Made by a program: the position numbers and the translations under genes. From positions 62,001 through 126,000 of IMG/VR virus record IMGVR_UViG_3300032046_000001: 64,000 nt of DNA. The stretch is one strand, 5' to 3'. The notes under the pieces were generated by a model. It did no database searches. It saw only the letters and a program-made list of their open reading frames with translations, and was not told the DNA's origin. Below, in pieces: positions 2,285 through 63,816 of this stretch (the stretch's first letter is position 1; each line of letters starts with the position of its first letter).

Positions 2285-2875
2285 ATGAAAATAGATGAAA
2301 ATACAAAAATTGAAACTTGGAGAATTATAGATGATTTTCCAGACTACCAAATTAGTAATTTTGGTAGAGTGAAATCACTAAAGTTTAGAAAAGAAAAAAT
2401 TAAAAAATTGTTGATAGATCACAAGGGATACTTATATACTAAGTTATGGACTAATGGTAAAAATAAAAATAAAAAAGTTCATATTCTAATTTATGAGTCT
2501 TTTAATAATTATAAATTAAAATCGAATGAGTGTATTCATCATATTGACTTTAATACAGAAAATAATAGTATTGATAATTTTAAATTAATGACATTATATG
2601 ACCATAAGTGTCTTCACCGTACTGGTATAAATAATCCAATTTTTGGAAAAAATCATACATATAAAGCTAAAATAAAAATGAGTCAAAATAGTAGAACTCA
2701 TAAATTAGAAGAATGGAAAGTTAAAGCGATACATCAAATTTCAAATTCTCCAATTATAAAACAATTAAAAATAACTCAAGAAGAAATTGGTAAAGTATTT
2801 GAAATTAATGAAAGAACTGTTTCTGCAATAAAAAATAAAAAAATTTGGAATCACGTTTTAGAGAATTTATCATGA
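2285..2875 (+). CDS. NUMOD4-HNH homing endonuclease with C-terminal HTH
   Basis: WRIIDDFPDYQISNFGRVKS (NUMOD4), IHHIDFNTENN (HNH), TQEEIGKVFEI (HTH). Confidence 0.85.
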   Translation: MKIDENTKIETWRIIDDFPDYQISNFGRVKSLKFRKEKIKKLLIDHKGYLYTKLWTNGKNKNKKVHILIYESFNNYKLKSNECIHHIDFNTENNSIDNFKLMTLYDHKCLHRTGINNPIFGKNHTYKAKIKMSQNSRTHKLEEWKVKAIHQISNSPIIKQLKITQEEIGKVFEINERTVSAIKNKKIWNHVLENLS

Positions 2876-3744
2876 AAGAACGAGCTATATTATTTGGACC
2901 ATTTATTGGTGAATTAGGTTGGGAAATACTTCGATTTTCACCACTGGTTCCATATCATAAAAAACATAACCCTGATGCTAAAATTGTTGTTTTGACAAGA
3001 CCTGATAGATTTGATCTTTATGGTGAATATGCTGATATTCTTGTTTCATTAAATATAGACGGAAAATATAAAGCCGATTGTTATAGAGCAATCGGTTTTC
3101 CTATGGAAGAATATAAACAACTTACAGACCGTTTGTATAATCAGTTCTCAAAAAAATTTAATATTATAACACATATATTTCCCAATATTTCTGGAAAAAA
3201 TTTCGCTAATAAAAATCAATATTCGCAAAAACAATTGAAATACAAGTGGAAACCAAGATTGGCTAATGGTGAAGCCATCAAAAATTATATATTAAATGAT
3301 AAACAATCAATAGTACTTGCTCCAAGATTTAGAGATGGTTTACGTCGTAATTGGCCACATTGGAAAGAATTATATGATCTAATCAGTAATCACGATATCT
3401 ATAAGAAGTATAACTTTATTATTTGTGGTAAACCACCAGATTACATTCCAGATGAAAAAAATAGATTTTATGATATAAATAAAATTAAATTAAATAGTGA
3501 AATATCAACAATAGGTCTTACAATCGAGGCAATCAAAAGATCAATATTGACTGTTGGTTCACAATCAGGCATTCCAAATTTATCAATGATGATGGGGATT
3601 CCTGTATTGGAATGGGGTCATCAACGTCATCTACACGAATCTACTTATAATGTTAAAAAAACAAAAATTTATTTTTTAGATGATATGAAATACAATTTAG
3701 ATCCAAAAATAATTTTCAGTAAAATGATAGAAATTTTAAAATAA
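2872..3744 (+). CDS. GT-B-fold glycosyltransferase (GT9-like)
   Basis: GPFIGELGW and VGSQSGIPNLSMMMGIP motifs; ATG at 2872 overlaps the upstream TGA; paralog of 13430. Confidence 0.6.
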   Translation: MKERAILFGPFIGELGWEILRFSPLVPYHKKHNPDAKIVVLTRPDRFDLYGEYADILVSLNIDGKYKADCYRAIGFPMEEYKQLTDRLYNQFSKKFNIITHIFPNISGKNFANKNQYSQKQLKYKWKPRLANGEAIKNYILNDKQSIVLAPRFRDGLRRNWPHWKELYDLISNHDIYKKYNFIICGKPPDYIPDEKNRFYDINKIKLNSEISTIGLTIEAIKRSILTVGSQSGIPNLSMMMGIPVLEWGHQRHLHESTYNVKKTKIYFLDDMKYNLDPKIIFSKMIEILK

Positions 3745-4583
3745 TGAATAATCATTACTATATTTATATCTATTTAGATCCTCGTAAATCTGGAAAATAT
3801 TGCTATAGTGATATTTGTTTTTTATTTGAACCTTTATATATTGGTAAAGGAAAAGATAAACGATATAAAAGACTTGATAATAGAAATAATTTATTTAAAA
3901 ATAAAATAAATAGAATTAAAAAATGTGGATATGAATTAATTGTTTTTAAATTACACGAAAATTTAAATGAAGAACAATCATTCGAATTAGAGAAAAAATT
4001 AATAAAAGAAATTGGTAGAATTGACTTAAACACTGGTTTACTCGTCAATATGACCGATGGTGGAGAAGGAAGTAGTGGATGTGTTATTTCAGAAGAAACA
4101 AAAAATAATATTAAAAAAAGAATGATTGGTAAAAACAATCCAATGTTTGGAAAATGTGTATACGGTATGTTGGGAAAAAAACATAAAGAGGAATCAAGGA
4201 GATTAATATCTGAAAAAGCAAGCGGTAGAAAATTATCAAGAGAAATTAAGAAAAAATTCTCTAATTCAAAAATTGGTAAGTTCAATCCAATGTACAAAAA
4301 TATTATTTATTTTGATATAAATACTAAATTACCAGTAAAACAGATTGGAGAAAAAAATCCATCATCAAAGTTATCTGAAAAAGATGTTATAAATATATGG
4401 TTTGATATTTTAAATAAAAAATTAACTCAAACTGAAATAGCTAAAAAATTTAATATTGAAAAAACAACAGTGTATAATATAAAAACTGGAAGAAAATGGA
4501 AACATATATACTATAATTTAAAAATAATATTTTTGAATAAATTAATATATATTTTAAAAATAAAACATAGGGAGAGACTTTAA
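3744..4583 (+). CDS. GIY-YIG-like homing endonuclease with NUMOD3 and HTH
   Basis: YIYIYLDPR...YIGKG..R, NMTDGGEG, NPMFGK, TQTEIAKKF. Confidence 0.8.
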   Translation: MNNHYYIYIYLDPRKSGKYCYSDICFLFEPLYIGKGKDKRYKRLDNRNNLFKNKINRIKKCGYELIVFKLHENLNEEQSFELEKKLIKEIGRIDLNTGLLVNMTDGGEGSSGCVISEETKNNIKKRMIGKNNPMFGKCVYGMLGKKHKEESRRLISEKASGRKLSREIKKKFSNSKIGKFNPMYKNIIYFDINTKLPVKQIGEKNPSSKLSEKDVINIWFDILNKKLTQTEIAKKFNIEKTTVYNIKTGRKWKHIYYNLKIIFLNKLIYILKIKHRERL

Positions 4584-4596
4584 AGTCTCTCCCTAT
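4567..4596. terminator. Bidirectional terminator (perfect 30-bp palindrome)
   Basis: ATAGGGAGAGACTTT/AAAGTCTCTCCCTAT between convergent genes. Confidence 0.75.
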
Positions 4597-4625
4597 TAGT
4601 CCATCAAGACTACAAATTTCAATAA

Positions 4626-5876: not shown

Positions 5877-5895
5877 TGTTAGTTCTCCTTTCAAG

Positions 5896-6423
5896 TTAAA
5901 TTCGTTTAAATATTTCCCAGTTTTTCTTAAATTCTTCCTGAACCGATGGAATAATTATTGGAGGTAATTTACCTTCAAGTGACCTTCCATACAAAAGATC
6001 ATCTCTAATTTCAGTTGCTGATACCTTTGGTGTTGTCCCATCAAACCGATTCATAAGTTGTATTTTTCGACCAGATTTTATGAAGAACTCAACATCCTCT
6101 TCACACCCGCCAAAGAAAACGAGATCTCGATGTGGTGCAGTGGATGAATTACCAAATACTGTTAATAAAATATCATCAAGTGCCGATAACCAAAATTCAT
6201 CAGAATTATAATCAGGTATTCCAACAATTGGAAATGGTTCTGGATAAATCATTCTGATAAATTTTTTTCGTTGTTCGTATGAAAAAAAGTGTCTCATTGA
6301 CATTGAATTTGTTGATGAACCTATAACAACAAGACACTTCGCGCACATCTCAAACATCATATTGATGACGGTGGTGTGACCTCTATGTATTGGGTTAAAT
6401 CTACCAATGAAGACTCCTCGCAT
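5896..6423 (-). CDS. NMN adenylyltransferase / cytidylyltransferase-family protein (NadM-like)
   Basis: GRFNPIHRGH (HxGH) and VSATEIR motifs. Confidence 0.8.
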   Translation of the reverse strand: MRGVFIGRFNPIHRGHTTVINMMFEMCAKCLVVIGSSTNSMSMRHFFSYEQRKKFIRMIYPEPFPIVGIPDYNSDEFWLSALDDILLTVFGNSSTAPHRDLVFFGGCEEDVEFFIKSGRKIQLMNRFDGTTPKVSATEIRDDLLYGRSLEGKLPPIIIPSVQEEFKKNWEIFKRI

Positions 6424-6764: not shown

Positions 6765-6806
6765 GACATCACTCTCCTATTTAAAAAATAGATTATTAAT
6801 CTCATA

Positions 6807-7395: not shown

Positions 7396-7406
7396 AAAAT
7401 TTTTAT

Positions 7407-7500
7407 AAGAGAGATAGAGATTGCAACTCGAAAAGAAGTAATCCGAAACTTCCTTCTCTCTTTAATATAATTCGGAAATAACAATCGGAGGTTATAAAAA
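7407..7500 (+). ncRNA. Structured leader RNA, copy 1 (three-way junction plus pseudoknot) upstream of an HNH gene
   Basis: P1 7407-14/7455-62, P2 7417-19/7427-29, P3 7435-39/7448-52; loop TCCGAA complementary to TTCGGA (7471) and to the SD region TCGGAG (7485). Confidence 0.75.
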
Positions 7501-8088
7501 ATGAAAATATTTGAAAATTTAGACTTACGAGATTTAGATAAAGAAGTTTGGAAAACTATAGAAGAATATCCAGATTATCAAATTAGTAACTTGGGTAGAG
7601 TTAAAAGTTTTAAAAATAATTGTGGTATAGATGTTAAAATATTAAAACAAATAAAAGATAAAAATGGATATCTAATTATTGATTTATATAAGAACGGAAA
7701 ATCAAAACTTAAAAAAGTTCATCGTCTTGTTTATGAAACTCATACAGGAAAATTAGAAGAAGATTATGATGCTCATCATGTAAATGAAGATAAAGAAAAT
7801 AATTTTGTTGGGAATTTAGAAACTAAAGAACATGGAAAACACTCAAAAGATCATCATAAAGATAAAATAATTTCAAAAGAAATAAGAATAAAAATGAGTA
7901 ATACAAGAAAGGAAAGATATAAAAAAGAAAATCATCCAAATTATAAAATAACAAATCAAAAAATTATTGATATCGTCGTTGATATAGAAAAAGGAGATTT
8001 AACACAAGTAGAAATAGCTAAAAAACATGGAGTTGGTCAAACAACAGTATCGTGTATAAAAACAGGAAAATTAAAATTTTATAATTAG
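7501..8088 (+). CDS. NUMOD4-HNH homing endonuclease
   Basis: WKTIEEYPDYQISNLGRVKS; VHRLV...AHHVNEDKENN; C-terminal HTH. Confidence 0.85.
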   Translation: MKIFENLDLRDLDKEVWKTIEEYPDYQISNLGRVKSFKNNCGIDVKILKQIKDKNGYLIIDLYKNGKSKLKKVHRLVYETHTGKLEEDYDAHHVNEDKENNFVGNLETKEHGKHSKDHHKDKIISKEIRIKMSNTRKERYKKENHPNYKITNQKIIDIVVDIEKGDLTQVEIAKKHGVGQTTVSCIKTGKLKFYN

Positions 8089-12600: not shown

Positions 12601-12638
12601 ATTCGGAAACATTATAACCATTATTTGGGAACAAAATT

Positions 12639-12734
12639 AAGAGAGATAGAGACTTAAGCTCGAAAAGGATAACCAGTAATCCCTGCTCTCTATAATTTTA
12701 TTTACTGGTAAATTCAAAACTGGAGAATTTTAAA
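12639..12734 (+). ncRNA. Structured leader RNA, copy 2, upstream of a GIY-YIG-like gene
   Basis: Same core GAGAGATAGAG-N7-CTCGAAAAG; P3 GGAT/ATCC; loop ACCAGTA complementary to TACTGGT (12703) and ACTGGAG (12719). Confidence 0.75.
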
Positions 12735-13433
12735 ATGAATAGATATTATATTTATATTTATCTTGATCCAAGAAAACATGGAAAATATTGTTATAAAAAT
12801 ATGTGTTTTACTTTTGAACCTTTTTATGTTGGTAAAGGAAGTAATGGAAGATATAAAAATATTAGTAGAAGAAGTGATTATTTTATAAGAAAAATAAATA
12901 AAATTAAAAAATCTGGATTAGAACCAATTGTTATAAAATTATTTGAAAATTTATTTGAAAAACAATCATTAGATAAAGAAATTGAATTAATAGAAGAAAT
13001 TAGAAAAATAAATCCAGGATTTCTTGTTAATGAGACAGATGGTGGCGATGGTACAAGCGGATATATTCATACTGAAGAATCGAAAAATAAAATGAGTGAA
13101 AATCATAAGGGAAAAATAGTTTCTGAAGAAACAAGAAAGAAAATGAGTGAAAACAACAAAGGAGAAAATCATCCAAATTTTGGAAAACATCCATCAGAAG
13201 AAACAAGAAAGAAAATGAGCGAATCACAAAATGGTAAAAAACTTTCTGAAGAAACAAGGATGAAAATGAGTGAAAATCATTATAATAAAATACCGGATCA
13301 AAAAATTATCGATATTCAATCAGATATAGAAAAAGGAGATTTTACTCAAACTGAAATATCTAAAAAACATGGAGTTTGTAGAATGACGATTTGGAAAATA
13401 AAAACTGAAAAAATTATAGTGGTGAATAAATGA
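12735..13433 (+). CDS. GIY-YIG-like homing endonuclease with tandem NUMOD3 repeats and HTH
   Basis: YIYIYLDPRK, FYVGKG, NETDGGDG; four (S/T)EE(T/S)xxKMSE repeats. Confidence 0.8.
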   Translation: MNRYYIYIYLDPRKHGKYCYKNMCFTFEPFYVGKGSNGRYKNISRRSDYFIRKINKIKKSGLEPIVIKLFENLFEKQSLDKEIELIEEIRKINPGFLVNETDGGDGTSGYIHTEESKNKMSENHKGKIVSEETRKKMSENNKGENHPNFGKHPSEETRKKMSESQNGKKLSEETRMKMSENHYNKIPDQKIIDIQSDIEKGDFTQTEISKKHGVCRMTIWKIKTEKIIVVNK

Positions 13434-16811: not shown

Positions 16812-17735
16812 TTGAAAATATTATTACTCAGTAGAAATCAATTATATAAAAGAAATTGGGGAAGAGAACTATTTAAACGAGATGTGTCTAAATATCATGA
16901 TGTCAGATATTATGGAAGATCTTATCCAAATTCTCCATCTAAAAATATACAACAAATTTTAAATGAAGTTTCAAAACCAGATATTATTTTTACGCATGTA
17001 ATGTTTTATGCATCTTATTTTAATGGATATGAATCAACAAATATTCCTAAAGTTCATTTGGAAGTAGACTATGTCTTACCAAAAGATACGTATCCAGGAA
17101 CCATCTATGCCCAAAATCCATTTTATAAAAAAAGTAAATATAATTTAATATTTGGCGTCACAAAAAGAATGGTTATGGATATGAAAAATCAAAATATCGC
17201 ACCAAAAATTTTTTGGTTGCCATTTTCAGTTTCTACCGATAAATACAAAAATTTAAATTTAGAAAAAACAATTGATGTTATGTCTGTTTTTTTAGTAAAA
17301 GATTATCTATATCCAAACAGAAGATATTTACAAGAAGTAGTTCATTCACTAAAAAATAATTTAAAAATAAATGTTTTTACAAATTATGTTGTTCATGAAG
17401 AATATATTAAAAAAATAAATCAGTCAAAAATATTTATAACAAGTAATAACCTTTATAATTCATTAAATATGAAATATACAGAAGTACTAGCGTGTGGAAC
17501 ATTATTATTCGCAAATGAACCAGAAGACTTAACAGATATTAAACTTAAAGATGGAGAACATTTAATTATTTATAAAAATTGGAAAGATTTGAAATCTAAG
17601 GTTCGATATTATTTATCTCATGATAAAGAACGTGAAGAAATCGCGCAAAATGGAATGAATTTTGTGAGAGAACATCATAGTAATGAAATCAGAATAAAAG
17701 AAATGACAGAAATAATTCAAAAAGAGGTTTTATGA
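16812..17735 (+). CDS. CgeB-like GT-B glycosyltransferase (Glyco_trans_1_2)
   Basis: KYTEVLACG...DGEH...YYLSHDKEREEIAQNG; TTG start. Confidence 0.75.
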   Translation: MKILLLSRNQLYKRNWGRELFKRDVSKYHDVRYYGRSYPNSPSKNIQQILNEVSKPDIIFTHVMFYASYFNGYESTNIPKVHLEVDYVLPKDTYPGTIYAQNPFYKKSKYNLIFGVTKRMVMDMKNQNIAPKIFWLPFSVSTDKYKNLNLEKTIDVMSVFLVKDYLYPNRRYLQEVVHSLKNNLKINVFTNYVVHEEYIKKINQSKIFITSNNLYNSLNMKYTEVLACGTLLFANEPEDLTDIKLKDGEHLIIYKNWKDLKSKVRYYLSHDKEREEIAQNGMNFVREHHSNEIRIKEMTEIIQKEVL

Positions 17736-18328
17736 AAATATATGAAAATTTAGATATCAATGATTTAGAAAATGAGATTTGGAAGACTATAGATGGTTAT
17801 CCAGATTATTCGGTAAGTAATCTTGGTAGAGTTAAATCATTAAAATTTGGAAAAGAAAAAATACTAAAACAAATTAAAGATGGTGAATATTTTATAATTA
17901 ATTTATCAGTTAAAAATAAGAAATATAAAAGAACAATTCATCGTTTAGTTTTTGAAACTTTTAATGATTATAAATTAGAATCATATGAATGTGTACATCA
18001 CAAAAATGAAAGTAAGAAAAATAATTATTATAAAAATTTAGAAAAAATGACAATAAAAAATCATAATTCAATTAATAATCTAGGAAAAGTAGCATCGATA
18101 GAAACAAAAATTAAAATGAGTAAAAATCAACCTGTTAAAAAAGGAGAAAAAAATTCAAACCATAAATTAAAAAATGGAGAAGTTTGGTTAATTAAAAAAA
18201 TATTAAATTCGGATTATTATAAATCTGGAAAAATAAATCAAACTTTTATTGGAAAGATGTTTAAAGTTAATAGACAAACAATTTCAGATATAAAGTGTGG
18301 AAAAACTTGGTCTCATATAAAAATATAA
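17732..18328 (+). CDS. NUMOD4-HNH homing endonuclease
   Basis: NUMOD4, CVHHKN and HTH; sits between two paralogous GT genes. Confidence 0.85.
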   Translation: MKIYENLDINDLENEIWKTIDGYPDYSVSNLGRVKSLKFGKEKILKQIKDGEYFIINLSVKNKKYKRTIHRLVFETFNDYKLESYECVHHKNESKKNNYYKNLEKMTIKNHNSINNLGKVASIETKIKMSKNQPVKKGEKNSNHKLKNGEVWLIKKILNSDYYKSGKINQTFIGKMFKVNRQTISDIKCGKTWSHIKI

Positions 18329-27822: not shown

Positions 27823-28223
27823 GTACTACATTAAAATTATCAAATAAAGAAATTATAGATTTAAATTTGATGTGTAAAATGATGTCATTTACAATAGGAA
27901 GTTGTTACTCAACATCGAATAACTGTGTGCCATCTCTTTATACATCATTTAATTCAAATGATATAAATAATATAAAAGATTTTAATAATAAATTAATGAA
28001 TAAAATAATAGAAGAAGAATCTGATAATTTAGAAGTTCCAAAAATAGAAAAAACTTTTATAGAAGAATTAAGATATTTGATCAATCAATACAGTAAAGAA
28101 AACGGTTCAGATACTCCAGATTTTATATTATCTGAATATTTAAATGAATGTCTTGAATTATTCAATAAAATAATAAATAAAAGAGAAGATTGGTATGGAC
28201 AGAAATTAAATGAAAATTTATGA
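27819..28223 (+). CDS. Hypothetical protein
   Basis: C-terminal SKENGSDTPDFIL-type phage ORFan domain. Confidence 0.6.
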   Translation: MSTTLKLSNKEIIDLNLMCKMMSFTIGSCYSTSNNCVPSLYTSFNSNDINNIKDFNNKLMNKIIEEESDNLEVPKIEKTFIEELRYLINQYSKENGSDTPDFILSEYLNECLELFNKIINKREDWYGQKLNENL

Positions 28224-28839
28224 AAATTTAGATATTAATGATTTAGATGGAGAAGTTTGGAAAACAATAGAAGGATATCCTGATTACCAAGTTAGTAATC
28301 TTGGTAGAGTTAAAAGAATTATTGTAGATAGATGGAATCATAAATTAAAAATATTAAAACAAAATAAAAATAATAATAAATATTTTAAAGTTAGTTTATC
28401 TAAAAATGGAATATCAAAAACTAAATTGGTTCATCGTCTTGTTTTTGAAACCTTTAAAGAAAGATTAAAAGATGGGCATGATGCTCATCACATAAATGAA
28501 GATAAAGAATATAATTTTATTAATAATTTAGAATCTAAACCACACGGAAAACATATAGAAGACCATAGAAAAGGAAAGAAACTTTCAGAAGAAACTAAAA
28601 ATAGAATTAGTGAAAGTAGTGAAGGAAAAATATTATCTGAAGAAACAAAAAAGAAAATGAGTGAAAGTAAAAAAGGAGAAAATCATCCAAATTTTAAAAT
28701 AACAAATCCAAAAATCATTGGTATTCAAATAGATATAGAAAATAGAAATTTGACACAAAAAGAAATTGGTAGAAAAAACAGAATTTCCCAGTCAATGATA
28801 TCTAAAATAAAAACAGGAAAAATTAGGTATCATATATGA
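28210..28839 (+). CDS. NUMOD4-HNH homing endonuclease with NUMOD3 and HTH
   Basis: NUMOD4, AHHINEDKEYN, SEETKKKMSE. Confidence 0.85.
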   Translation: MKIYENLDINDLDGEVWKTIEGYPDYQVSNLGRVKRIIVDRWNHKLKILKQNKNNNKYFKVSLSKNGISKTKLVHRLVFETFKERLKDGHDAHHINEDKEYNFINNLESKPHGKHIEDHRKGKKLSEETKNRISESSEGKILSEETKKKMSESKKGENHPNFKITNPKIIGIQIDIENRNLTQKEIGRKNRISQSMISKIKTGKIRYHI

Positions 28840-29933
28840 AGATTGCAACAGTAATTGGAAATCGTCCACAAATAATAAAAACTTGTTTATTTTCAAATAA
28901 AGTAAGACAATTAGGAATTAAAGAAATATTGATAAATACAAATCAGCACTATGATTTTAATTTATCAGATATATTTTTCAAAGAATTAAATGTGCCACTT
29001 CCCGATTATAATTTAAATATTGGTGGTACTTCTCCATGTCAGCAAATAGGAAATGGAATAATTAAACTTGAAAAAATACTACTAAAAGAAATGCCAAGTA
29101 TACTAGTTGTATTTGGTGACACAAATTCTACATTAATCGGAGCATTAACAGCCAAAAAATTAAGTATTCCTATTGCACATATCGAGTCTGGTATGCGTTG
29201 CTTCGACAAAAATATGCCAGAAGAAACAAACAGAGTACTGACAGATCACATGTCTGATTACTTATTTTGTCCGTCTCAAGTTTCATATCAAAATTTGGCA
29301 AAAGAACATCTTATTAAACCAGATAAGACAATTATTTCTGGTGATGTTATGATCGATGTTCTCATAGAAGTTATGAAAAAGATTGATGAAGATGAAATAT
29401 TTAATAAAATTAAAAATAAATATAAAGTAGAAAAAGATAGTTATATTTTAACAACTGTTCATAGGGCAGAAAATACTGATAATATAGACAGACTAAAAAA
29501 TATAATTGAAGCTCTAATTGAAATATCAAATGATATTCCTGTTGTATTTCCAATTCACCCCAGAACAGAGAAAATTTTGAAGAATCTAAAATTAGATCTT
29601 CCTAAAAATTTAATTATTATTGATCCAGTTGGTTATAAAGACATGTTAATATTGGAGAAGAATTCCAAGTTAATTATTACAGACTCAGGCGGGATACAGA
29701 GGGAGGTGTATTTCTTTAGGAAGCCTAGTGTAATCACTAGAAATTCTACAGAGTGGGTAGAACTTATACTGTGTGGATATTCAAAATTAGTTGATACGAT
29801 TAACAAAAATGAAATTACAAGTTCTATTAAAGAATTATTAAATGATAATTATTTAAATAATAAAAATTGGGATGCTTTTTATGGAATAGGGAATAGTACA
29901 AATATTATAATAAAATATTTAATTGGAGATTAA
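28836..29933 (+). CDS. wecB: Non-hydrolysing UDP-GlcNAc 2-epimerase (WecB/WbpI family)
   Basis: GNRPQIIK, QHYD, GDTNST, HIESGMR, PEETNR, TDSGGIQRE. Confidence 0.9.
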   Translation: MKIATVIGNRPQIIKTCLFSNKVRQLGIKEILINTNQHYDFNLSDIFFKELNVPLPDYNLNIGGTSPCQQIGNGIIKLEKILLKEMPSILVVFGDTNSTLIGALTAKKLSIPIAHIESGMRCFDKNMPEETNRVLTDHMSDYLFCPSQVSYQNLAKEHLIKPDKTIISGDVMIDVLIEVMKKIDEDEIFNKIKNKYKVEKDSYILTTVHRAENTDNIDRLKNIIEALIEISNDIPVVFPIHPRTEKILKNLKLDLPKNLIIIDPVGYKDMLILEKNSKLIITDSGGIQREVYFFRKPSVITRNSTEWVELILCGYSKLVDTINKNEITSSIKELLNDNYLNNKNWDAFYGIGNSTNIIIKYLIGD

Positions 29934-30565
29934 TATTGTGGAAGTATATAAAAATTTAAATTTAAAAAATCTGGAAAATGAAATCTGGAAAGTTATAATA
30001 GACTTTCCAGATTATCAAGTTAGTAATTTAGGCAGAATTAAAAGTTTTAAACAAAATAAAATAAATGGAAAAATACGAAAACAAAAGAAAAATAAAGATG
30101 GATATTTAGAAATTGATTTATGTAAAAATGGAATATCAAAAACTAAATTAGTTCATCGTTTAGTTTATGAAAACTTCAAAGAAAAGTTAGAAGAAAAGTA
30201 TGATGCTCATCATATAAATGGGGATAGAGAATATAATTTTATTAATAATTTAGAACCTGTATTACACAGTGAACATTCAATTGGTAAAATAGTTTCAGAA
30301 GAAACCAAAAGAAAAATAAGTAAAAATCATGCTGATTTTAAAGGAAGATCTGGTATTAAAAGACCAGGAGAAGACAACCAAAATTCAAAGTTAAAAGATG
30401 GAGAAGTCTGGTTAATTAAAAAAATATTAAATTCGGATTATTATAAATCTGGAAAAATAACTCAGAAATTTATAGGAAATATGTTTGGTGTTGTTCAAAC
30501 TGTAATTTCAAAAATAAAACTTGGAAAATCATGGTCGCATATAAAATATTTAATCGGAGAATAAT
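29910..30565 (+). mobile_element. HNH cassette bounded by 25-bp direct repeats (23/25 identical)
   Basis: ATAAAATATTTAAT(T/C)GGAGA(T/A)TAAT at 29910-29934 and 30541-30565. Confidence 0.6.
29938..30564 (+). CDS. NUMOD4-HNH homing endonuclease
   Basis: NUMOD4, HNH and HTH; GTG at 29938 matches paralog starts and has SD GGAG. Confidence 0.8.
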   Translation: MEVYKNLNLKNLENEIWKVIIDFPDYQVSNLGRIKSFKQNKINGKIRKQKKNKDGYLEIDLCKNGISKTKLVHRLVYENFKEKLEEKYDAHHINGDREYNFINNLEPVLHSEHSIGKIVSEETKRKISKNHADFKGRSGIKRPGEDNQNSKLKDGEVWLIKKILNSDYYKSGKITQKFIGNMFGVVQTVISKIKLGKSWSHIKYLIGE

Positions 30566-38023: not shown

Positions 38024-38192
38024 TAAAATAAAAATGAATGAACTATCAATAGATTATTATTCAAATAGTCAACAAGTTGTAATTAATAAAATAAATGAGA
38101 TGGTTGAAGCTATGAATCAAATGAGAAATGATATAGACGAACTTATGTCAGTATGGAAAGTAACGAATGATGAATATTTTAGTAATTGGTAA
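38016..38192 (+). CDS. 58-aa hypothetical protein
   Basis: SD GGAGAGG; KINEM motif. Confidence 0.45.
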   Translation: MIDKIKMNELSIDYYSNSQQVVINKINEMVEAMNQMRNDIDELMSVWKVTNDEYFSNW

Positions 38193-41232: not shown

Positions 41233-41611
41233 TTTAAATGAATCTATTAAAGCGAGAAATAAAGAAAAAACAAATATTTTAAAAGTTATATATGGCGAAC
41301 TTCAAAGACATGAAAAAAATTTAAATGATGAACAAGTTGAGGATGTTTTAAGAAAACTTATAAACGATGAAAAAGAGAATGTTGAAAGATTGAAAAAATC
41401 TGATATATATCATCAATATTTTTCACCATATTTACTCATATTAGAAAACTATGTACCACAACAAATATCTGAAGATGAAGTACGAAAGTGGATAATCGAT
41501 AATATCGATTTTTCTCAATATAAAAATAAAAATGAATCAATTAAAGTTGTCAAAACTAAATTTAAAAATTATGATGGAAAGATAATCAAGAAGATTATAG
41601 AACAATTATGA
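41204..41611 (+). CDS. GatB/YqeY-domain protein
   Basis: L.ERI..DL..SIKAR...ILE.Y.PQQ.SE.EV. Confidence 0.75.
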   Translation: MTLQERIKNDLNESIKARNKEKTNILKVIYGELQRHEKNLNDEQVEDVLRKLINDEKENVERLKKSDIYHQYFSPYLLILENYVPQQISEDEVRKWIIDNIDFSQYKNKNESIKVVKTKFKNYDGKIIKKIIEQL

Positions 41612-42243
41612 TTGAACTATCTAGAGAAGAAATTCTTTCTAAATATGTAGATCATTATAACTTAACACTTGAAATGAGAGAAGATTCAGATAAAATATAT
41701 GAAAATATTATCGATTTTGAATATAAAGATGATTATAAGTGGTGGAAAAAAATTATATTTCCTCTTAATACGATAGAGGATTTAGAATTCTGGCAGTACT
41801 GTAATATATTTGGAAAACCAACTCAAAATAGATTAACATATCATCCACAAATGTTTAAAATCAACTTTATACCGAAATATGAATATTTTATTATACCAAA
41901 AGTAAGATTTTGTACTTGGCCAACAAGCGATACACCACATGATTGTATGCCTCTTTATGAAAAAATTAGATTGGAATCACTAACTGCTATATTTAGAGAA
42001 ACCAATAATATAACTTTTATGAGAATACAACCAAAAACAATTATAAAAAAAATTGGTAATGTTTCTATTAAAAGAACTGAGCATGAACATATTATAGATT
42101 GTAATAAATTATTTGAAATTATGAATTATGAATTTAGATTTTTTAAATTTGAATTAACTGTTGATGGATTTGAGAAATTATACTCAGATAAAAGAATTGA
42201 TTTATCAAATAAAGAGTATATAATCAGAATGGAGAATGTATGA
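41608..42243 (+). CDS. Hypothetical protein
   Basis: 211-aa coupled ORF. Confidence 0.6.
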   Translation: MIELSREEILSKYVDHYNLTLEMREDSDKIYENIIDFEYKDDYKWWKKIIFPLNTIEDLEFWQYCNIFGKPTQNRLTYHPQMFKINFIPKYEYFIIPKVRFCTWPTSDTPHDCMPLYEKIRLESLTAIFRETNNITFMRIQPKTIIKKIGNVSIKRTEHEHIIDCNKLFEIMNYEFRFFKFELTVDGFEKLYSDKRIDLSNKEYIIRMENV

Positions 42244-46868: not shown

Positions 46869-47150
46869 ATGACTATTGAATTTAAAGAAAATAAAAATAC
46901 ATTAAAACTCTTAAATGAGAGACGAATGATTGAGTATATTTCAACTGTTATATCTAATAATGTTTTTAACTGTACTTTACCAGAAGCTGAATTAAAAATT
47001 ATTAATTTTATTTCAAACGTAATGAATAGGATGTATAGAAATAAAAATTTAATACCACTGGTTGAAACAGAGATTGATTATAATAGTGGTAAAATTTCAA
47101 TATGTTTTGATTTCTCAGATTATACGATGAGTTTTGATAAATATATATGA
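46869..47150 (+). CDS. Hypothetical protein, paralog of 34531
   Basis: SD AAGGAG. Confidence 0.6.
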   Translation: MTIEFKENKNTLKLLNERRMIEYISTVISNNVFNCTLPEAELKIINFISNVMNRMYRNKNLIPLVETEIDYNSGKISICFDFSDYTMSFDKYI

Positions 47151-47797
47151 AAATATTTAAAAATTTAGACTTACAAGATTTAGATGGTGAGATCTGGAAA
47201 GTTATAAAAGACTTTCCAGACTATTCTGTGAGTAATTTAGGTAGAGTTAAAAGTTTTAAATATGATAAAATAAATGGAAAAATAAGAAAACAACAAAAAA
47301 GTGATAAACATTTATTTCTTAGATTATGTAAAAATGGAAAACAAAAAAATAAAAAAATTCATATTTTAGAATTTGAATTTTTTAATAATTATAAATTAAA
47401 AGAAGATGAATGTGTTCATCATATTGATTTTAATCCAGAAAATAATATTTTAAATAATTTAATAATAATGCCAAAATCAGAGCATATTAAATTACATATG
47501 ACTGGAAAAGTATTTTCGGAAAAACATAAAAATAAAATGAGTGAAAATCATATTGGAATGAAAGGAAAATATCATTCTAAAGAAACAAAAAAATTAATGA
47601 GTATTAGTAGAATAATTAGTGGAAAACAAAAAGGTGAAAATAATCCAAGTCACAAATTAACAGAAGAACAAGTAATTCAAATTAAATTATTATTAAAAGA
47701 AGGTATATTAACTCAACAAGAAATAGCTGATATATTTGGAGTTGACAGAAAAACTATTTCGAATATAAAAACTGGAAGAACTTGGTATTATATATGA
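47147..47797 (+). CDS. NUMOD4-HNH homing endonuclease
   Basis: NUMOD4, CVHHIDFNPENN, NUMOD3, HTH; 12-bp flanking direct repeat. Confidence 0.85.
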   Translation: MKIFKNLDLQDLDGEIWKVIKDFPDYSVSNLGRVKSFKYDKINGKIRKQQKSDKHLFLRLCKNGKQKNKKIHILEFEFFNNYKLKEDECVHHIDFNPENNILNNLIIMPKSEHIKLHMTGKVFSEKHKNKMSENHIGMKGKYHSKETKKLMSISRIISGKQKGENNPSHKLTEEQVIQIKLLLKEGILTQQEIADIFGVDRKTISNIKTGRTWYYI

Positions 47798-59841: not shown

Positions 59842-62800
59842 TTGTTCAGTATTAAAAATTCAAAATTCAGTGATTGTTTTTCTTGTAAATTATTAGGTGC
59901 GCCTTCTTGTATTCTTGAGACGAACTGTAAAGATGATTTATCAAAAATTGACATAATCATAGTTGCTGAAAATCCAGGAAAAAATGAAGTTGAAGCTGGT
60001 ATACCATTAATTGGAAGATCTGGTAAAACTTTCAGAAAATATTTTGACAAGTATTTGAGAAATCTAAATTATTTAATTACGAATGTTGTGTTGTGTCAAA
60101 CTATTGATGCTGAAGGAAATACGAGTAATCCCGATGATGAGACAATTGAAAGATGTAAAAATAATCTTGTAGCACTAATAGATATCTGTAAACCTAAATT
60201 AATTTTTTGTATGGGGGCATCACCAGCAGCAGCATTCGATATTAAGAAAGTGAAAATGACTGATGTACGTGGTGAAATTATAAAATGGAATGGTTATGAT
60301 GTATTATTAACAATACATCCTTCATATGTGAATAGAAATAAAAAAACCAATCCAGAATTTGAAATGAATTTTGAAAGTGATTTTGTGAAAGCCGCGAATT
60401 TATTAGGTATTAGTGTCAAACAGAACAATGTTGAAGAAAGTTTTGTGTCAACATCAAAGGGCATACAATCATATATGATTCCTGAAAAATATTATACTGA
60501 TGAATACAGATTAATTGATATTCATTATTCATCTTTAAAAAATCAAGTGATTTATATTTTCAGAGATAAGAATGAAGTGAAATCATACTATATTGTTGAT
60601 GATCAATATTATTGTTATCAAACACCAACAAAAATTGATAATAGACCAGTTGTTGAATATGATAATTTAAATCGATTATCAATAAAATATGCCGACAGAA
60701 AAAGATTAGATTCTAAAATCACATATGAGGGTGATATTAAAATTTATGATAAACACATCATTGATTATTTTATTCACAATAAGGGTGAAGCGATTGACAC
60801 AAATTTAAATATTTACTATGTTGATATCGAAGTCGATCCTGGTGAATCAAAAGGTGTATCAAATGCCGATGAAGCTGAGTTTCCAATTAATTTAATTACT
60901 GTCAGATATAACGGACAAACTATAACGTATGTTTTGGATAATGGAACAAAAATTAACAAAATAAAAGATGTTGAACTTAAAATATTCAAAACTGAGAAAT
61001 CACTAATGATAACATTCTTGGATGATTTAGATAAATTCAATCCCGATATAATCACTGGATGGAATGTTATTAGTTTTGATATGTGTTATATTTTCAATAG
61101 ATTGCCAAAACTAAATATTAATAAAATGAGAATATCACCTTTCAAAGATGCGTATATCGATAAAGAAAGAGGATATGCGAATGTTCCTGGTTATGTTCTG
61201 ATAGATATGTGTTCATTGTACAAAGAGTTCCAATTGAAAGCCAGAGAAAATTATAAACTTGGTACAATCGCACAGGTCGAAGTTGGTGAAACAAAAATTC
61301 AACTCGAAGGTTCATTTTCAGATATGTATCGAAATAATATTAATAAATTTATCGAATATAATATTCGAGATACAATGCTCCTAGAGAAACTTGAAAATAA
61401 ATTAAAGTTCATTAAGTTATTGAATGAATTAAGAAGAATTTGTTCTGGATCTTTCAAAACATGTGAAAATACATCAGGACGTTTGGACTGTTTAGTAACA
61501 AGACATTTGAAATGTAAAAATTTCGCTTCCAGAAATTCACAAGGTCTTTCTAAAGAAAAATTTCCAGGAGCGTATGTCCAAGAACCAATGATGGGAATTC
61601 ATAATTATGTAGTTGATTTTGATTATAAATCTCTATATCCGAGTTTAGTATTGACCTACAATATTGGTATTAATACATTCTTGATGAAGTTTGAGAATTT
61701 AAGATTCGGTTATGACTTGGCGTATGACATTGATAATTTACCCGAAAAGTTCATTATTGTTAAAGATCCATTATTTAAGAATGAACGAATTGAATATACA
61801 AAAGAACAACTTTTAAATGAAATAAAAGATCAAAATCTTATTTGTACAATTAATGGTTGTTTTTATAAAAATCATAAGACCGAGCTATCATATTATAGTG
61901 AAATTCTTGAACATCTTCTGAGTTCACGAGATGTCTCCAAGAGAAAGATGTTAGAACTAAAAGAGGCGAAAGAATTTGATATGGTTGAGTTATATGATAT
62001 TCGACAGAAAACATATAAAGTTTTAGCCAATGCTCTTTATGGTATTTTAGGAACTAATATTTATAGATTCTTTAATCTTGATATGGCATCTTCGATTACA
62101 CTATCAGGACAAGAAGTTATTAAAAATTCAATTTTACATGTTGATAAGTATATGGATAATTTAAAGAGAGGAATTAAAGAAGATGTTGATATCACAATAT
62201 CAAAAGAAAATGTCTACACTGATTGGATGGATGTGAAATTGAAATATATCATTACAAGCGATACCGATTCGATATTAGCGACATTATCAAAATTTATAAA
62301 AAGTAAAGATTATGAAACATCAATTCAAGAAATGACAGATATCTGTTCGAGTATTCAAAATTTTATAAACAATCAAGTTGTTTCAAGAATAATAAATAGA
62401 CATAATGTTCCAATTGATAAAAATCGATTAAAAATTAAAAATGAATTGATGTGTTCGAGAGGTTTATTTGTTAGCAAGAAACACTACGCACTCTATGTAA
62501 TATTTCAAGAGAATAAACGTGTTGATGAAATGACAATTACTGGATTAGAAATAAAACGTCGTGATTTTTCATCATATACAAAAGATTGTATGAAAGAACT
62601 TCTTGATATTATTTTAAAATCTGAAAAAATATCATTTAATCAAATTATGTCATATGTCAAGGAGAAAGAATATGAATTCATTAAAAGAATTCGATGTGGT
62701 GATAAAACTGTTGCAAGACCAAGTGGTTGGAAGAAAAAATTAGATGAATATAAAGTTATTCCTCAAGGAATTTACGCAATGATGAACTGGAACGATTTAT

Positions 62801-63075
62801 TATATAATTCATTCGAATGTGGTGTTCGTGGATATTTATTTAAAATTAATGGCATAGATATTTCAAAGACACCAAAGAATGTTATTGAGAATTATAATAA
62901 AATATTTGTATCTGGTGGTAAAACTTTAGAAACCATATGTGTACCGGATGAAGAATCCAGACTTCCTGAATATTTTATCCCAGATATGAAAGAGATGTTA
63001 AAGTTTCACTGGATTGATCGTTACAGTCAGTTATTAGCACCAATTATTAAACCAGTTGAATTAGTAAAAATTTAA
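59842..63075 (+). CDS. Family-4 uracil-DNA glycosylase fused to a family-B DNA polymerase
   Basis: UDG4: CxxC, AENPG..E, G.SG, TNVVLC, HPS. PolB: DIE, GWN..FD, YNIRD, DYKSLYPS, K...NALYG, SDTDS, KKHY. Confidence 0.9.
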   Translation: MFSIKNSKFSDCFSCKLLGAPSCILETNCKDDLSKIDIIIVAENPGKNEVEAGIPLIGRSGKTFRKYFDKYLRNLNYLITNVVLCQTIDAEGNTSNPDDETIERCKNNLVALIDICKPKLIFCMGASPAAAFDIKKVKMTDVRGEIIKWNGYDVLLTIHPSYVNRNKKTNPEFEMNFESDFVKAANLLGISVKQNNVEESFVSTSKGIQSYMIPEKYYTDEYRLIDIHYSSLKNQVIYIFRDKNEVKSYYIVDDQYYCYQTPTKIDNRPVVEYDNLNRLSIKYADRKRLDSKITYEGDIKIYDKHIIDYFIHNKGEAIDTNLNIYYVDIEVDPGESKGVSNADEAEFPINLITVRYNGQTITYVLDNGTKINKIKDVELKIFKTEKSLMITFLDDLDKFNPDIITGWNVISFDMCYIFNRLPKLNINKMRISPFKDAYIDKERGYANVPGYVLIDMCSLYKEFQLKARENYKLGTIAQVEVGETKIQLEGSFSDMYRNNINKFIEYNIRDTMLLEKLENKLKFIKLLNELRRICSGSFKTCENTSGRLDCLVTRHLKCKNFASRNSQGLSKEKFPGAYVQEPMMGIHNYVVDFDYKSLYPSLVLTYNIGINTFLMKFENLRFGYDLAYDIDNLPEKFIIVKDPLFKNERIEYTKEQLLNEIKDQNLICTINGCFYKNHKTELSYYSEILEHLLSSRDVSKRKMLELKEAKEFDMVELYDIRQKTYKVLANALYGILGTNIYRFFNLDMASSITLSGQEVIKNSILHVDKYMDNLKRGIKEDVDITISKENVYTDWMDVKLKYIITSDTDSILATLSKFIKSKDYETSIQEMTDICSSIQNFINNQVVSRIINRHNVPIDKNRLKIKNELMCSRGLFVSKKHYALYVIFQENKRVDEMTITGLEIKRRDFSSYTKDCMKELLDIILKSEKISFNQIMSYVKEKEYEFIKRIRCGDKTVARPSGWKKKLDEYKVIPQGIYAMMNWNDLLYNSFECGVRGYLFKINGIDISKTPKNVIENYNKIFVSGGKTLETICVPDEESRLPEYFIPDMKEMLKFHWIDRYSQLLAPIIKPVELVKI

Positions 63076-63117
63076 TTTGATATGGAATTATTTTATCATG
63101 GATGATAACAAAATATA

Positions 63118-63210
63118 AAAGAGAGATAGAGACTTAAGCTCGAAAAGAAGTATTCCGAAACTTCCTTCTCTCTTTATTATTCATTCGGAATGATTATCGG
63201 AGATTATAAA
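63118..63210 (+). ncRNA. Structured leader RNA, copy 3, upstream of an HNH gene
   Basis: P1 63118-26/63167-75; loop ATTCCGAA complementary to TTCGGAAT (63184) and to TCGGAG (63197). Confidence 0.75.
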
Positions 63211-63816
63211 ATGAAAATTTATGAAAATTTAGATTTACAAGATTTAGATGTAGAAGTTTGGAGAACTATAAAAGAATACCCAGATTATTCTATTAGTAAT
63301 TTAGGAAGGGTTAAATCATTAAAATTTGGAAAAGAAAGAGTATTAAAACAAGGTAAAAATAGTAGAAAATATTTTTGTGTTGTTTTATCTAAAAATAAAA
63401 ATAAAAAAACAAAATTAGTTCATATACTTGTTTTTGAAATTTATAATAATTACAAATTAAAATCAAATGAGTGTATTCATCACAAAGATGGGAATAAAGA
63501 AAATAATTATTATAAAAATTTAGAAAGAATGACTAAATTAGATCACTTAAGTTTACACAACAAAGGAGAAAACAATCCTATGTTTGGAAAATATTTATCT
63601 ACAAAAACAAAAATGATGATAAGTAAAAATCATTTCGATAATAAAGGTGAAAATAATCCACATCATAAACTAACAGAAGAACAAGTTATCCAGATAAAAT
63701 TATTATTAAAAGAGGGAATATTAACTCAAGAAGAAATAGCTGATATATTTGGAGTTGGTAAAATGACAATTTCAAAAATAAAGAGAGGAAAATTATGGAA
63801 ACATGTGAAAATATGA
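63211..63816 (+). CDS. NUMOD4-HNH homing endonuclease
   Basis: MKIYENLDLQDL start as in paralogs; CIHHKDGNKENN; HTH. Confidence 0.85.
   Translation: MKIYENLDLQDLDVEVWRTIKEYPDYSISNLGRVKSLKFGKERVLKQGKNSRKYFCVVLSKNKNKKTKLVHILVFEIYNNYKLKSNECIHHKDGNKENNYYKNLERMTKLDHLSLHNKGENNPMFGKYLSTKTKMMISKNHFDNKGENNPHHKLTEEQVIQIKLLLKEGILTQEEIADIFGVGKMTISKIKRGKLWKHVKI

What the first reader, a model, noticed from the sequence alone, without database searches (positions are those of the whole stretch)
2285..63816. Nine endonuclease genes with mix-and-match nuclease and DNA-binding modules
Seen: HNH subtype A (DAHH.N.D.E.NF: 7501, 28210, 29938), subtype B (NYKL/DYKL...EC.HH: 2285, 17732, 47147, 63211) and GIY-YIG-like (3744, 12735) assort independently of C-terminal HTH type. 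KII.I..DIE occurs in 7501, 28210 and the GIY-YIG 12735. GEVWLIKKILNSDYYKSGKI occurs in 17732 (B) and 29938 (A), nearly identical at DNA level. HKLTEEQVIQIKLLLKEGILTQ occurs in 47147 and 63211. NUMOD3 copy number also varies. Inference: recent intragenomic recombination among copies generates new specificities. About one endonuclease gene per 7 kb is a high load.
Basis: partly seen in the sequence, partly recalled or inferred. Interest (0 to 1): 0.6.

Follow-up and report, generated by a model that had tools for sequence, protein, structure and literature searches.

The report
Modular homing endonucleases with shared RNA leader
A 312-kb phage from sediment carries 36 selfish DNA-cutting genes assembled from interchangeable parts, which is a known kind of thing, but a third of them share a previously undescribed folded RNA leader that probably controls their translation.

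Summary
All nine ORFs are homing-endonuclease genes (HEGs): seven I-HmuI-like NUMOD4-HNH and two GIY-YIG.

The window is part of a complete 312,420-bp phage genome with 36 such genes, one per 8.7 kb and 7.7% of the DNA.

At least five C-terminal HTH types are spread almost at random over three nuclease classes. Nuclease and HTH trees are significantly incongruent in both directions. Chimeric genes switch parent in the NUMOD3 linker. Related phages have HEGs where this genome has none, and the reverse.

"Recent" and "intragenomic" are not shown. Silent sites in shared modules are only slightly more alike than codon bias predicts, and relatives carry the same module types. "New specificities" is untested. 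The strongly conserved HTH protein sequence argues for a small reused repertoire.

HEG domain shuffling is already described.

The new item is a roughly 95-nt leader before 12 HEGs of both nuclease classes, three of them in the window. It forms a three-way junction. One hairpin loop is complementary both to a nearby Shine-Dalgarno mimic and to the true Shine-Dalgarno, and all three covary. About 70 copies exist here and in metagenomes, nearly all before HEGs, and no Rfam family matches. It is probably a portable translational switch.

The parts
2285..2875 (+). Free-standing HEG: NUMOD4 + HNH (class B, EC.HH) + weak NUMOD3 + HTH type T3 (module at 2708-2764). Absent from relative L005.
   Evidence: Pfam; motifs. 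L005 has a 77-bp spacer at this site.
3744..4583 (+). Free-standing GIY-YIG HEG with NUMOD3 and a divergent T1-like HTH. Absent from relative L005.
   Evidence: Pfam; alignment A7; synteny.
7406..7500 (+). Leader RNA copy 1. Three-way junction core 7406-7463, SD mimic (site 1) 7471-7476, true SD 7485-7491, start codon 7501.
   Evidence: (77.7 bits).
7501..8088 (+). HEG: NUMOD4 + HNH (class A, DAHH) + HTH type T4 (7960-7989).
   Evidence: Pfam; trees.
12638..12734 (+). Leader RNA copy 2. Core 12638-12693, site 1 12703-12709, SD 12719-12725, start codon 12735.
   Evidence: (61.6 bits).
12735..13433 (+). GIY-YIG HEG with about four NUMOD3 repeats and HTH type T4 (13302-13331). Chimera of a g157076p-like nuclease and a 7501-like HTH.
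   Evidence: Pfam; trio scan; AF2 and Foldseek.
17732..18328 (+). HEG: NUMOD4 + HNH class B + HTH type T2 (18176-18235). Sits between two paralogous glycosyltransferase genes.
   Evidence: Pfam.
28210..28839 (+). HEG: NUMOD4 + HNH class A + two NUMOD3 + HTH type T4 (28711-28740).
   Evidence: Pfam.
29923..30564 (+). HEG (probable start GTG 29938): HNH class A + HTH type T2 (30400-30459). Chimera: residues 51-117 are nearest to 28210, residues 143-190 are nearest to 17732 (up to 97% nt).
47147..47797 (+). HEG: NUMOD4 + HNH class B + NUMOD3 + HTH type T1 (47654-47716). Modelled; the fold matches I-HmuI.
63118..63210 (+). Leader RNA copy 3. Core 63118-63175, site 1 63184-63191, SD 63197-63203, start codon 63211.
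   Evidence: (75.7 bits).
63211..63816 (+). HEG directly after the UDG-PolB gene: HNH class B + NUMOD3 + HTH type T1 (63667-63729).
38024..38166 (.). Empty site. Relative L006 has a 203-aa NUMOD4-HNH HEG here, between the homologues of 37538-38023 and purD.
41608..42243 (+). 211-aa ORF with no family match. It occupies the slot where L006 has a frameshifted HEG.

Best explanation
The nine genes belong to a family of 36 free-standing homing endonuclease genes in a complete 312-kb sediment phage that is distantly T4-like by its polymerase.

Each gene is built from exchangeable cassettes, in this order:
- An expression module: either a conserved structured leader RNA or translational coupling to the upstream gene.
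- A nuclease: I-HmuI-like NUMOD4-HNH of class A or B, or GIY-YIG.
- A linker of 0-4 NUMOD3 helices and/or 1-3 CapR-like zinc-ribbon repeats.
- One of at least five C-terminal helix-turn-helix (HTH) types.

Cassettes have been swapped repeatedly by homologous recombination within the conserved linker (the NUMOD3 and GENNPN-type stretches). The swaps happened among copies in one genome and/or between co-infecting relatives, over a time long enough for silent sites to approach saturation. The HTH protein sequences stayed under strong purifying selection.

The genes behave as mobile or turnover elements. Their occupancy differs between related phages, and decayed fragments remain.

The leader most likely acts as a translational switch. 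The loop of hairpin P3 is an anti-Shine-Dalgarno sequence. It can pair either with an adjacent SD mimic (pseudoknot, ribosome site free) or with the true SD (ribosome site blocked).

Shown: gene identities, mosaicism, incongruent trees, occupancy polymorphism, and RNA covariation. Inferred: nuclease activity, homing, the recombination mechanism, and the switch.
For: - Identity. Pfam. A profile of 30 HNH copies hits I-HmuI 1U3E at E = 2e-18. The AF2 model (pLDDT 80) has 1U3E as top Foldseek hit at E = 5.9e-6. The GIY model hits the GIY-YIG nucleases PD-T4-3 (prob 1.0) and UvrC.
- Family size. 24 NUMOD4 hits; 36 ORFs; fragments.
- Mosaicism. The module table. On the nuclease tree, HTH labels need 14 changes against 15.6 for shuffled labels, and the HNH-A clade (support 94/82) holds every HTH type. 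AU tests. Trio crossovers. PHI p < 0.001.
- Age..
- Mobility. L006 has three HEGs in 9.5 kb that is syntenic at 74-80% nt identity, where the window has none. L005 lacks two window HEGs.
- Leader. 14 copies in the genome. RNAalifold finds P1-P3 on its own. 94.8% of cells are paired against 79.8% shuffled, 12 of 16 pairs are compensatory, and 0 of 500 shuffles reach this. The same holds on 46 independent metagenome copies. The loop is complementary to site 1 and to the SD in all 24 copies, and cognate beats non-cognate in 20,000 of 20,000 permutations for both pairings. Downstream ORFs are 29 HNH and 8 GIY-YIG (7 scored automatically plus L158 by eye). G.U cells outnumber A.C cells 12:4 and 18:4.
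Against: - No cleavage, homing or expression data exist.
- The trees rest on short domains (114 and 56 columns), and many forks are unresolved.
- The relatives are short metagenome contigs, so gain cannot be told from loss.
- Single-sequence folding energies of the leader are unremarkable (z = -2.0, +0.6, -0.3).
- The CM-made alignments lean towards the model.
- The pseudoknot and the SD pairing are inferred from complementarity only. Site 1 pairs at least as well as the SD, so it is unclear what would ever drive the off state.
Confidence: 0.85

Rival explanations
1. Ongoing, recent gene conversion among copies inside this one genome homogenises the HTH modules and creates new target specificities.
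For: - The 12 T1 modules in this genome are 90-100% identical in protein, while the T1-like modules of relatives differ.
- A few long near-identical DNA tracts exist: 105 nt at 97%, 61 nt at 100%, and 70 nt at 97% between 17732 and 29923.
- One pair shares 28 of 29 codons (p = 7e-5 before correction).
- PHI is significant.
Against: - Silent-site identity in T1 is 0.76 against 0.63 expected. The excess is similar to that of the nuclease domains.
- None of 274 pairs has a significantly younger C-terminus after correction.
- PHI within the T1-carrying HNH group gives p = 0.06.
- Identical HTH modules in twelve enzymes argue against new specificity arising from that module.
Confidence: 0.3
2. The genes are domesticated nucleases rather than mobile homing elements, for example for excluding competing phages or degrading host DNA. 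The shared HTH would reflect a common function.
For: - All 36 are co-oriented with their neighbours and many are translationally coupled.
- The HTH protein sequence is under strong purifying selection.
- No shared flanking target motif was found.
Against: - Presence and absence differ between syntenic relatives.
- There are frameshifted and truncated copies and orphan fragments.
- The architecture is that of I-HmuI and of I-TevI/Seg-type homing enzymes.
- The two roles do not exclude each other. That T4 Seg and Mob enzymes also exclude rival phages is recalled from the literature, not checked here.
Confidence: 0.15
3. The leader is not an SD switch. It would instead be the binding site of a common trans-acting factor (a phage translational repressor, a small-molecule ligand, or an RNase), or it would act at the DNA level.
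For: - Junction nucleotides (UAG, GA[A/U]AAG, CC) are nearly invariant while all the helices vary.
- Leaders occur with every nuclease class and with four HTH types, so the HEG's own protein is an unlikely ligand.
Against: - The three-way covariation of loop, site 1 and SD is hard to explain without SD pairing.
- The excess of G.U over A.C cells favours RNA on the sense strand.
- There is no Rfam riboswitch or ribozyme match.
- A factor-binding role could coexist with the switch.
Confidence: 0.3

Closest known systems
I-HmuI (PDB 1U3E), the HNH homing endonuclease of Bacillus phage SPO1
   Same: Same order of parts: N-terminal beta-sheet domain (NUMOD4), HNH motif, helical linker (NUMOD3), C-terminal HTH. 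Profile match E = 2e-18 over residues 17-120. It is the top and only significant fold match over the whole length.
   Different: I-HmuI is intron-encoded, whereas these genes stand free between genes. Identity is only about 21% in the fold alignment. The C-terminal HTH comes in at least five exchangeable types here.
GIY-YIG homing endonucleases of T4 (I-TevI and the Seg proteins)
   Same: N-terminal GIY-YIG domain joined by NUMOD3-type linkers to a C-terminal HTH. Free-standing position between conserved genes (PMC2988022).
   Different: Pfam scores lie around the cut-off, at 19.7-29.4 against 27, and there is no sequence match to a solved structure. Several copies carry CapR-like zinc-ribbon repeats instead of, or as well as, NUMOD3 and HTH.
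HEG domain shuffling and CapR repeats in ICP1-like vibriophages (Barth et al. 2023, PMC10448857); NUMOD modules shared between HEG families (Sitbon and Pietrokovski 2003, from memory)
   Same: DNA-binding modules are exchanged between different nuclease families. There are repeated CapR-type zinc fingers. HEGs sit at the boundaries of conserved gene blocks.
   Different: Different nuclease families (T5orf172 there). Here the exchange is documented statistically within one genome of 36 copies, and an RNA leader is a further module.
RBS-sequestering hairpins of T4 I-TevI, I-TevII, I-TevIII, segB and Aeh1 mobE (PMC2988022)
   Same: An RNA structure upstream of an HEG pairs with its Shine-Dalgarno sequence and is thought to limit translation.
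   Different: Those are simple, gene-specific hairpins relieved by a late promoter inside the structure. Here one conserved three-way junction with a pseudoknot and an SD mimic is shared by many HEGs of two nuclease families and by several phages. No conserved promoter was found inside it.

Membership tests
I-HmuI-like NUMOD4-HNH homing endonucleases | N-terminal NUMOD4 domain followed by an HNH (beta-beta-alpha-metal) motif | tested here: met
   Pfam NUMOD4 E = 1e-10 to 1e-14 and HNH_3 in all seven. Invariant HH, N and H columns in 30 sequences.
I-HmuI-like NUMOD4-HNH homing endonucleases | Sequence and fold similarity to the solved I-HmuI structure | tested here: met
   hmmsearch against 1U3E gives E = 2e-18. 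Foldseek against 1U3E gives E = 5.9e-6, prob 1.0, 209 aligned columns.
I-HmuI-like NUMOD4-HNH homing endonucleases | Site-specific nicking or cleavage of an HEG-less allele, followed by homing | not testable with these tools
   Needs protein and crosses. The only indirect evidence is that occupancy differs between syntenic relatives.
GIY-YIG homing endonucleases (I-TevI/Seg type) | GIY-YIG catalytic domain with conserved Tyr motifs, Arg, Glu and Asn | tested here: met
   Pfam LEM-3_GIY-YIG scores 19.7-29.4 bits against a cut-off of 27. Y5, Y7, Y9, Y31, G33, R39, E75 and N99 are invariant in 11 copies. The model matches the GIY-YIG nuclease PD-T4-3 (prob 1.0) and the UvrC GIY-YIG domain. No sequence hit in the PDB, so support is moderate.
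GIY-YIG homing endonucleases (I-TevI/Seg type) | C-terminal modular DNA-binding region (NUMOD3 or zinc finger, plus HTH) | tested here: met
   NUMOD3 E = 1e-12 to 1e-21, HTH families and CapR repeats.
Free-standing (intergenic) mobile HEG | Present or absent at the same intergenic site in otherwise syntenic relatives | tested here: met
   The 2285 and 3744 HEGs are absent from L005. Three HEGs in L006 lie where the window has none or has another ORF.
T4-type RBS-sequestering regulatory RNA of HEGs | An upstream RNA segment is complementary to the Shine-Dalgarno sequence | tested here: met
   The P3 loop is complementary to 4-6 nt overlapping the SD in 24 of 24 copies. Cognate exceeds non-cognate in all 20,000 permutations. 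The pairing itself is predicted, not probed.
T4-type RBS-sequestering regulatory RNA of HEGs | A late promoter inside the structure, so that late transcripts escape repression | tested here: inconclusive
   No sigma-70-like site. A GGGAACAAAAT motif, promoter-like in its placement, lies just 5' of four leaders, not inside them.
Any curated RNA family (Rfam 15) | Covariance-model match at or near the gathering score | tested here: not met
   No match in the window at gathering thresholds. The best hit at E <= 10 on the leader is a chance-level miRNA model at 17.6 bits against 53.
Riboswitch | Conserved ligand pocket and a ligand-dependent conformational change | not testable with these tools
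   Junction nucleotides are nearly invariant, but no ligand can be inferred.

The most novel reading that the evidence does not exclude
The leader is a new class of structured cis-regulatory RNA dedicated to homing endonuclease genes. It would be a portable three-way-junction and pseudoknot switch whose anti-SD loop toggles between an SD mimic and the true SD, possibly under control of a phage or host factor. It travels and recombines as a fourth module alongside the nuclease and DNA-binding cassettes. This would let a selfish nuclease gene bring its own dosage control into any intergenic site it invades.
Probability: 0.45. Interest if true: 0.75.

Novelty: new variant of a known kind. Interest (0 to 1): 0.6.

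Why it matters
Mix-and-match HEGs are already known, so the gene family mainly adds an unusually large, statistically documented natural library. It has 36 copies, three nuclease classes and at least five HTH types. That makes it a good system for asking which module sets target choice, and for engineering chimeric nucleases.

The finding also corrects a tempting inference. In a 27% G+C genome, near-identical DNA in a conserved protein module does not show recent exchange.

The leader RNA is the part that could open something new. Regulation of selfish nucleases has so far been known only as ad hoc hairpins in T4-like phages. A conserved, mobile, covariation-supported switch with an SD mimic would be a defined and testable mechanism, and a new RNA family found in about 70 copies in sediment, soil and other metagenomes.

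Tried and rejected
- Megablast of 16 kb against isolated phages found no match.
- A search for PolB relatives in IMG/VR found none. The nearest isolate polymerases are about 28% identical.
- Single-sequence searches of the PDB gave only weak HTH hits for both HEG classes. The GIY profile also found nothing.
- A search for a DNA motif shared by the flanks of HEGs with the same HTH type found none. The idea that T1 carriers target one common flank sequence therefore has no support.
- Silent-site tests for recent conversion were mostly negative.
- The promoter and terminator scan at the leader found nothing.
- Leader folding energies against shuffles were unremarkable.
- Rfam gave no family.
- A hammerhead or other small ribozyme was considered because of the three-way junction and the GAAA-like junction. 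It was rejected: the CUGAUGA core is absent and Rfam does not match.
- Laying contigs of four sediment and soil runs on 58001-64000 did not resolve an HEG-less allele. It showed only paralogue cross-mapping, with summed depth 153 against 14 over the T1 module, and contig breaks inside the HEG.
- One viral-contig pattern hit (L079) and two weak CM hits (L098, L119) were treated as chance.

Full report
**1. What the window is**

The window has 25-33% G+C. It is bases 62001-126000 of a complete 312,420-bp virus record with direct terminal repeats. It comes from a sediment metagenome, and near-identical DNA occurs in other sediment and soil runs.

No isolated phage matches at the DNA level. The family-B polymerase, fused to a uracil-DNA glycosylase, is about 28% identical to those of marine T4-like phages.

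The first 31 kb of the window is a glycan-synthesis cluster: glycosyltransferases, methyltransferase-like genes and a UDP-GlcNAc 2-epimerase. The endonuclease genes sit between those genes.

**2.

All nine ORFs exist.
- Seven carry NUMOD4 + HNH_3, with 0-2 NUMOD3 motifs and a C-terminal helix-turn-helix (HTH).
- Two carry a GIY-YIG-like domain, NUMOD3 repeats and an HTH.

The paralogues match one another at E = 1e-26 to 1e-76, so this is homology, not chance.

A profile of 30 HNH copies matches I-HmuI (1U3E) at E = 2e-18. An AlphaFold model of 47147-47797 (pLDDT 80) has 1U3E as its only significant fold match, across the full length.

The GIY-YIG assignment is weaker but consistent:
- Pfam scores lie around the cut-off.
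- Tyr, Arg, Glu and Asn columns are invariant.
- The model matches the GIY-YIG nucleases PD-T4-3 and UvrC.

**3.

The genome has 24 NUMOD4 matches. By blastp it has 36 endonuclease ORFs: 25 HNH, including one divergent copy (PHROG 959), and 11 GIY-YIG.

That is one gene per 8.7 kb and 7.7% of the genome. For comparison, T4 has 15 HEGs making up 11% of its coding potential (PMC2988022).

All 36 are co-oriented with their neighbours, and many overlap the neighbouring stop or start codon.

There are also decayed pieces:
- a leader followed by 17 GIY-YIG codons;
- an orphan T1-type HTH;
- a 31-residue HNH N-terminus;
- one frameshifted copy.

**4. Modules and their assortment**

I distinguish nuclease classes HNH-A (D[AVI]HH), HNH-B (EC[IV]HH) and GIY-YIG. 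I distinguish HTH types T1-T5 by their recognition-helix regions.

| HTH type | Nuclease classes that carry it |
|---|---|
| T1 | HNH-B, HNH-A and GIY-YIG (12 copies) |
| T2 | HNH-B and HNH-A |
| T3 | HNH-B and HNH-A |
| T4 | HNH-A, HNH-B and GIY-YIG |
| T5 | HNH-A and HNH-B |

Some GIY-YIG genes carry 1-3 CapR-like zinc-ribbon repeats, with or without an HTH.

Tree evidence:
- On a maximum-likelihood tree of the nuclease domain, the HNH-A clade (support 94/82) contains every HTH type. HTH labels need 14 changes against 15.6 for shuffled labels, which is essentially random assortment.
- AU tests on the nuclease data reject monophyly of carriers of T1 (p = 0.0006), T2 (0.0014), T4 (0.010) and T5 (0.003). 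T3 is not rejected (0.14).
- On the HTH tree, the strongly supported T2, T3, T4 and T5 clades each mix nuclease classes.
- The HTH data reject 'GIY-YIG carriers are one clade' (p = 0.0025) and 'HNH-A carriers are one clade' (p = 6e-6).

Other recombination evidence:
- A PHI test that I implemented gives p < 0.001 for both the HNH and the GIY-YIG alignments.
- Sliding-window comparisons show clean parent switches in the linker. Gene 29923 follows 28210 through the HNH domain and 17732 through the HTH (up to 97% nt). Gene 12735 follows another GIY-YIG gene and then 7501.

It is not met, so the mosaic claim stands.

**5. How recent, and where?**

With 27% G+C, codon choice is so biased that two genes encoding the same residues are expected to share 62-73% of codons by chance.

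| Region | Codon identity at identical residues | Expected from codon usage |
|---|---|---|
| T1 HTH module | 0.76 | 0.63 |
| Nuclease domains | 0.80 | 0.73 |

Only a few pairs stand out: 28 of 29 codons for 47147 against a copy at genome position 181503, and 20 of 21 for another pair. None of 274 pairs has silent sites in the C-terminus significantly more alike than in its N-terminus after correction.

The DNA 'near-identity' is therefore mostly strong protein conservation plus codon bias. Most swaps are old.

The relatives' contigs carry T1-like, T2, T3 and T4-like modules on various nucleases. The repertoire is thus shared by the phage group, and exchange between co-infecting phages is as likely as intragenomic exchange.

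Twelve enzymes keep an almost identical T1 protein module while their silent sites drift. This points to a common constraint on that module, not to diversification of specificity through it. I found no motif shared by the flanks of T1 carriers.

**6. Mobility**

- Contig L006 is syntenic with window 35.8-45.4 kb at 74-80% nt identity. It has three HNH genes, one of them frameshifted, at three sites: where the window has a 143-bp spacer (38024-38166), where it has an unrelated 104-aa ORF, and where it has an unrelated 211-aa ORF.
- Contig L005 lacks the 2285 and 3744 genes. It has a different, leaderless HEG where the window has leader plus 7501.
- L009 is 95% identical to the window and keeps the 2285 gene.

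Occupancy is therefore polymorphic, as expected for free-standing homing endonuclease genes. The direction of change (gain or loss) cannot be told from fragments.

**7. The leader RNA**

Listing the DNA upstream of all 36 genes showed a conserved element of about 95 nt before 12 of them, covering HNH-A, HNH-B and GIY-YIG and HTH types T1, T3, T4 and T5. The other HEGs abut the upstream gene.

Structure. RNAalifold on a plain MAFFT alignment predicts a three-way junction:
- P1, a purine-rich strand paired with a pyrimidine-rich strand, 6-9 bp;
- P2, 3-4 bp;
- an invariant GA[A/U]AAG junction;
- P3, 4-5 bp.

Seven of the 14 predicted pairs are compensatory.

Copies. A covariance model finds 14 copies in the genome. 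Twelve precede intact HEGs, one precedes the GIY-YIG remnant, and one precedes a 50-aa C2H2-like ORF. It finds ten more in related viral contigs. A pattern scan of metagenome contigs followed by the model adds 46 distinct copies. Their downstream ORFs are 29 NUMOD4-HNH and 8 GIY-YIG (7 scored automatically plus L158 by eye). The rest are cut off by contig ends, remnants, or a few other ORFs.

Pair counts:

| Alignment | Cells paired | Shuffled | Compensatory pairs | Shuffles reaching this | Slid registers |
|---|---|---|---|---|---|
| 24 copies | 94.8% | 79.8% | 12 of 16 | 0 of 500 | 48-64% |
| 46 metagenome copies | 93.8% | 80.1% | 12 of 16 | 0 of 500 | 46-64% |

G.U cells outnumber A.C cells 12:4 and 18:4, which favours an RNA on the sense strand. 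No Rfam family matches, and I found no description in the papers searched.

The loop. In all 24 copies examined, the P3 loop is complementary to two places:
- site 1, 5-11 nt after P1, with 4-8 bp (5 or more in 23 of 24 copies);
- the bases overlapping the Shine-Dalgarno (SD) sequence, with 4-6 bp.

Site 1 reads like the SD without its last purines, for example loop UCCGA, site 1 UUCGGA and SD AUCGGAGG in the copy before 7501. There are 16 different loops. Cognate complementarity exceeds non-cognate in all 20,000 permutations, for both pairings. More matched triples appear in the metagenome copies.

Reading. The simplest reading is an anti-SD loop that can be parked on a decoy (ribosome site open) or can hold the real SD (site closed). 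What flips it is unknown. The nearly invariant junction bases could bind a factor. Single-sequence energies are unremarkable, so the case rests on covariation.

T4 HEGs are known to be limited by RBS-sequestering hairpins (PMC2988022). This would be a conserved and transferable version of that principle.

**8. Comparison with what is known**

Modular DNA-binding cassettes shared between HNH and GIY-YIG homing enzymes, repeated CapR fingers, and domain shuffling between HEGs have been described (PMC10448857; the NUMOD work is cited from memory).

The gene family is therefore a large new instance of a known kind. The leader is the element that departs from known systems.

**9. Verdict**

- Observation: confirmed.
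- Interpretation: partly supported.
- Interest: about 0.6, carried mainly by the leader RNA and by the size of the natural chimera library.

Noticed in passing
window 59842-63075 (+): A 1077-aa protein that fuses a uracil-DNA glycosylase domain (residues 36-175) to a family-B DNA polymerase with its exonuclease domain. An HEG with leader sits directly downstream.
   Followed up: partly
genome-wide; in the window at 6838 (48 nt before ORF 6886-7395) and 12627 (just 5' of the leader at 12638): The motif GGGAACAA(AAT) occurs 22 times against 3.7 expected. Most copies lie 28-108 nt upstream of gene starts on the same strand, and four lie directly 5' of leaders. It is probably a phage promoter element.
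   Followed up: partly
window 16812-17735 and 18338-19261; 16113-16811 and 30568-31251; 2845-3744 and 13430-14272: Three pairs of paralogous glycan-synthesis genes (31-55% identity), each with an HEG directly beside at least one member. HEG 17732 sits exactly between a tandem pair. This may reflect HEG-linked duplication or paralogous target sites.
   Followed up: no
window 41608-42243 (+) and 37237-37551 (+): Two ORFs (211 and 104 aa) with no Pfam or PHROG family. They occupy the exact intergenic slots where relative L006 carries HEGs, so they may be other kinds of insert.
   Followed up: partly
outside the window: genome 40120-40178 (-), 151328-151383 (+), 176955-177128 (+), 215674-215766 (-), 309554-309622 (-): HEG debris and odd leader contexts: a leader followed by only 17 GIY-YIG codons; a leader before a 50-aa C2H2-like zinc-finger ORF; an orphan T1-type HTH; a 31-residue HNH N-terminus; and the out-of-frame remainder of a frameshifted GIY-YIG gene.
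   Followed up: partly
outside the window: upstream of the HEG at genome 245914-246495 (-): The 130 nt before this HEG end in a sequence that looks like the T-arm and acceptor end of a tRNA gene. T4 segB also sits in a tRNA cluster. It was not checked with ARAGORN.
   Followed up: no
window 63601-63800: In the source run, summed contig depth over the T1 HTH module is 153 against a baseline of 14, and contigs break at 63700-63723. Repeated HEG modules evidently fragment metagenome assemblies of these phages.
   Followed up: no
window 4626-11574 and 49063-59591: Two blocks of minus-strand genes with higher G+C (0.31-0.33) and reversed GC skew interrupt the plus-strand, HEG-rich regions. They contain no HEGs. 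The only HEG between the first block's outer coordinates, at 7501, is on the plus strand.
   Followed up: no
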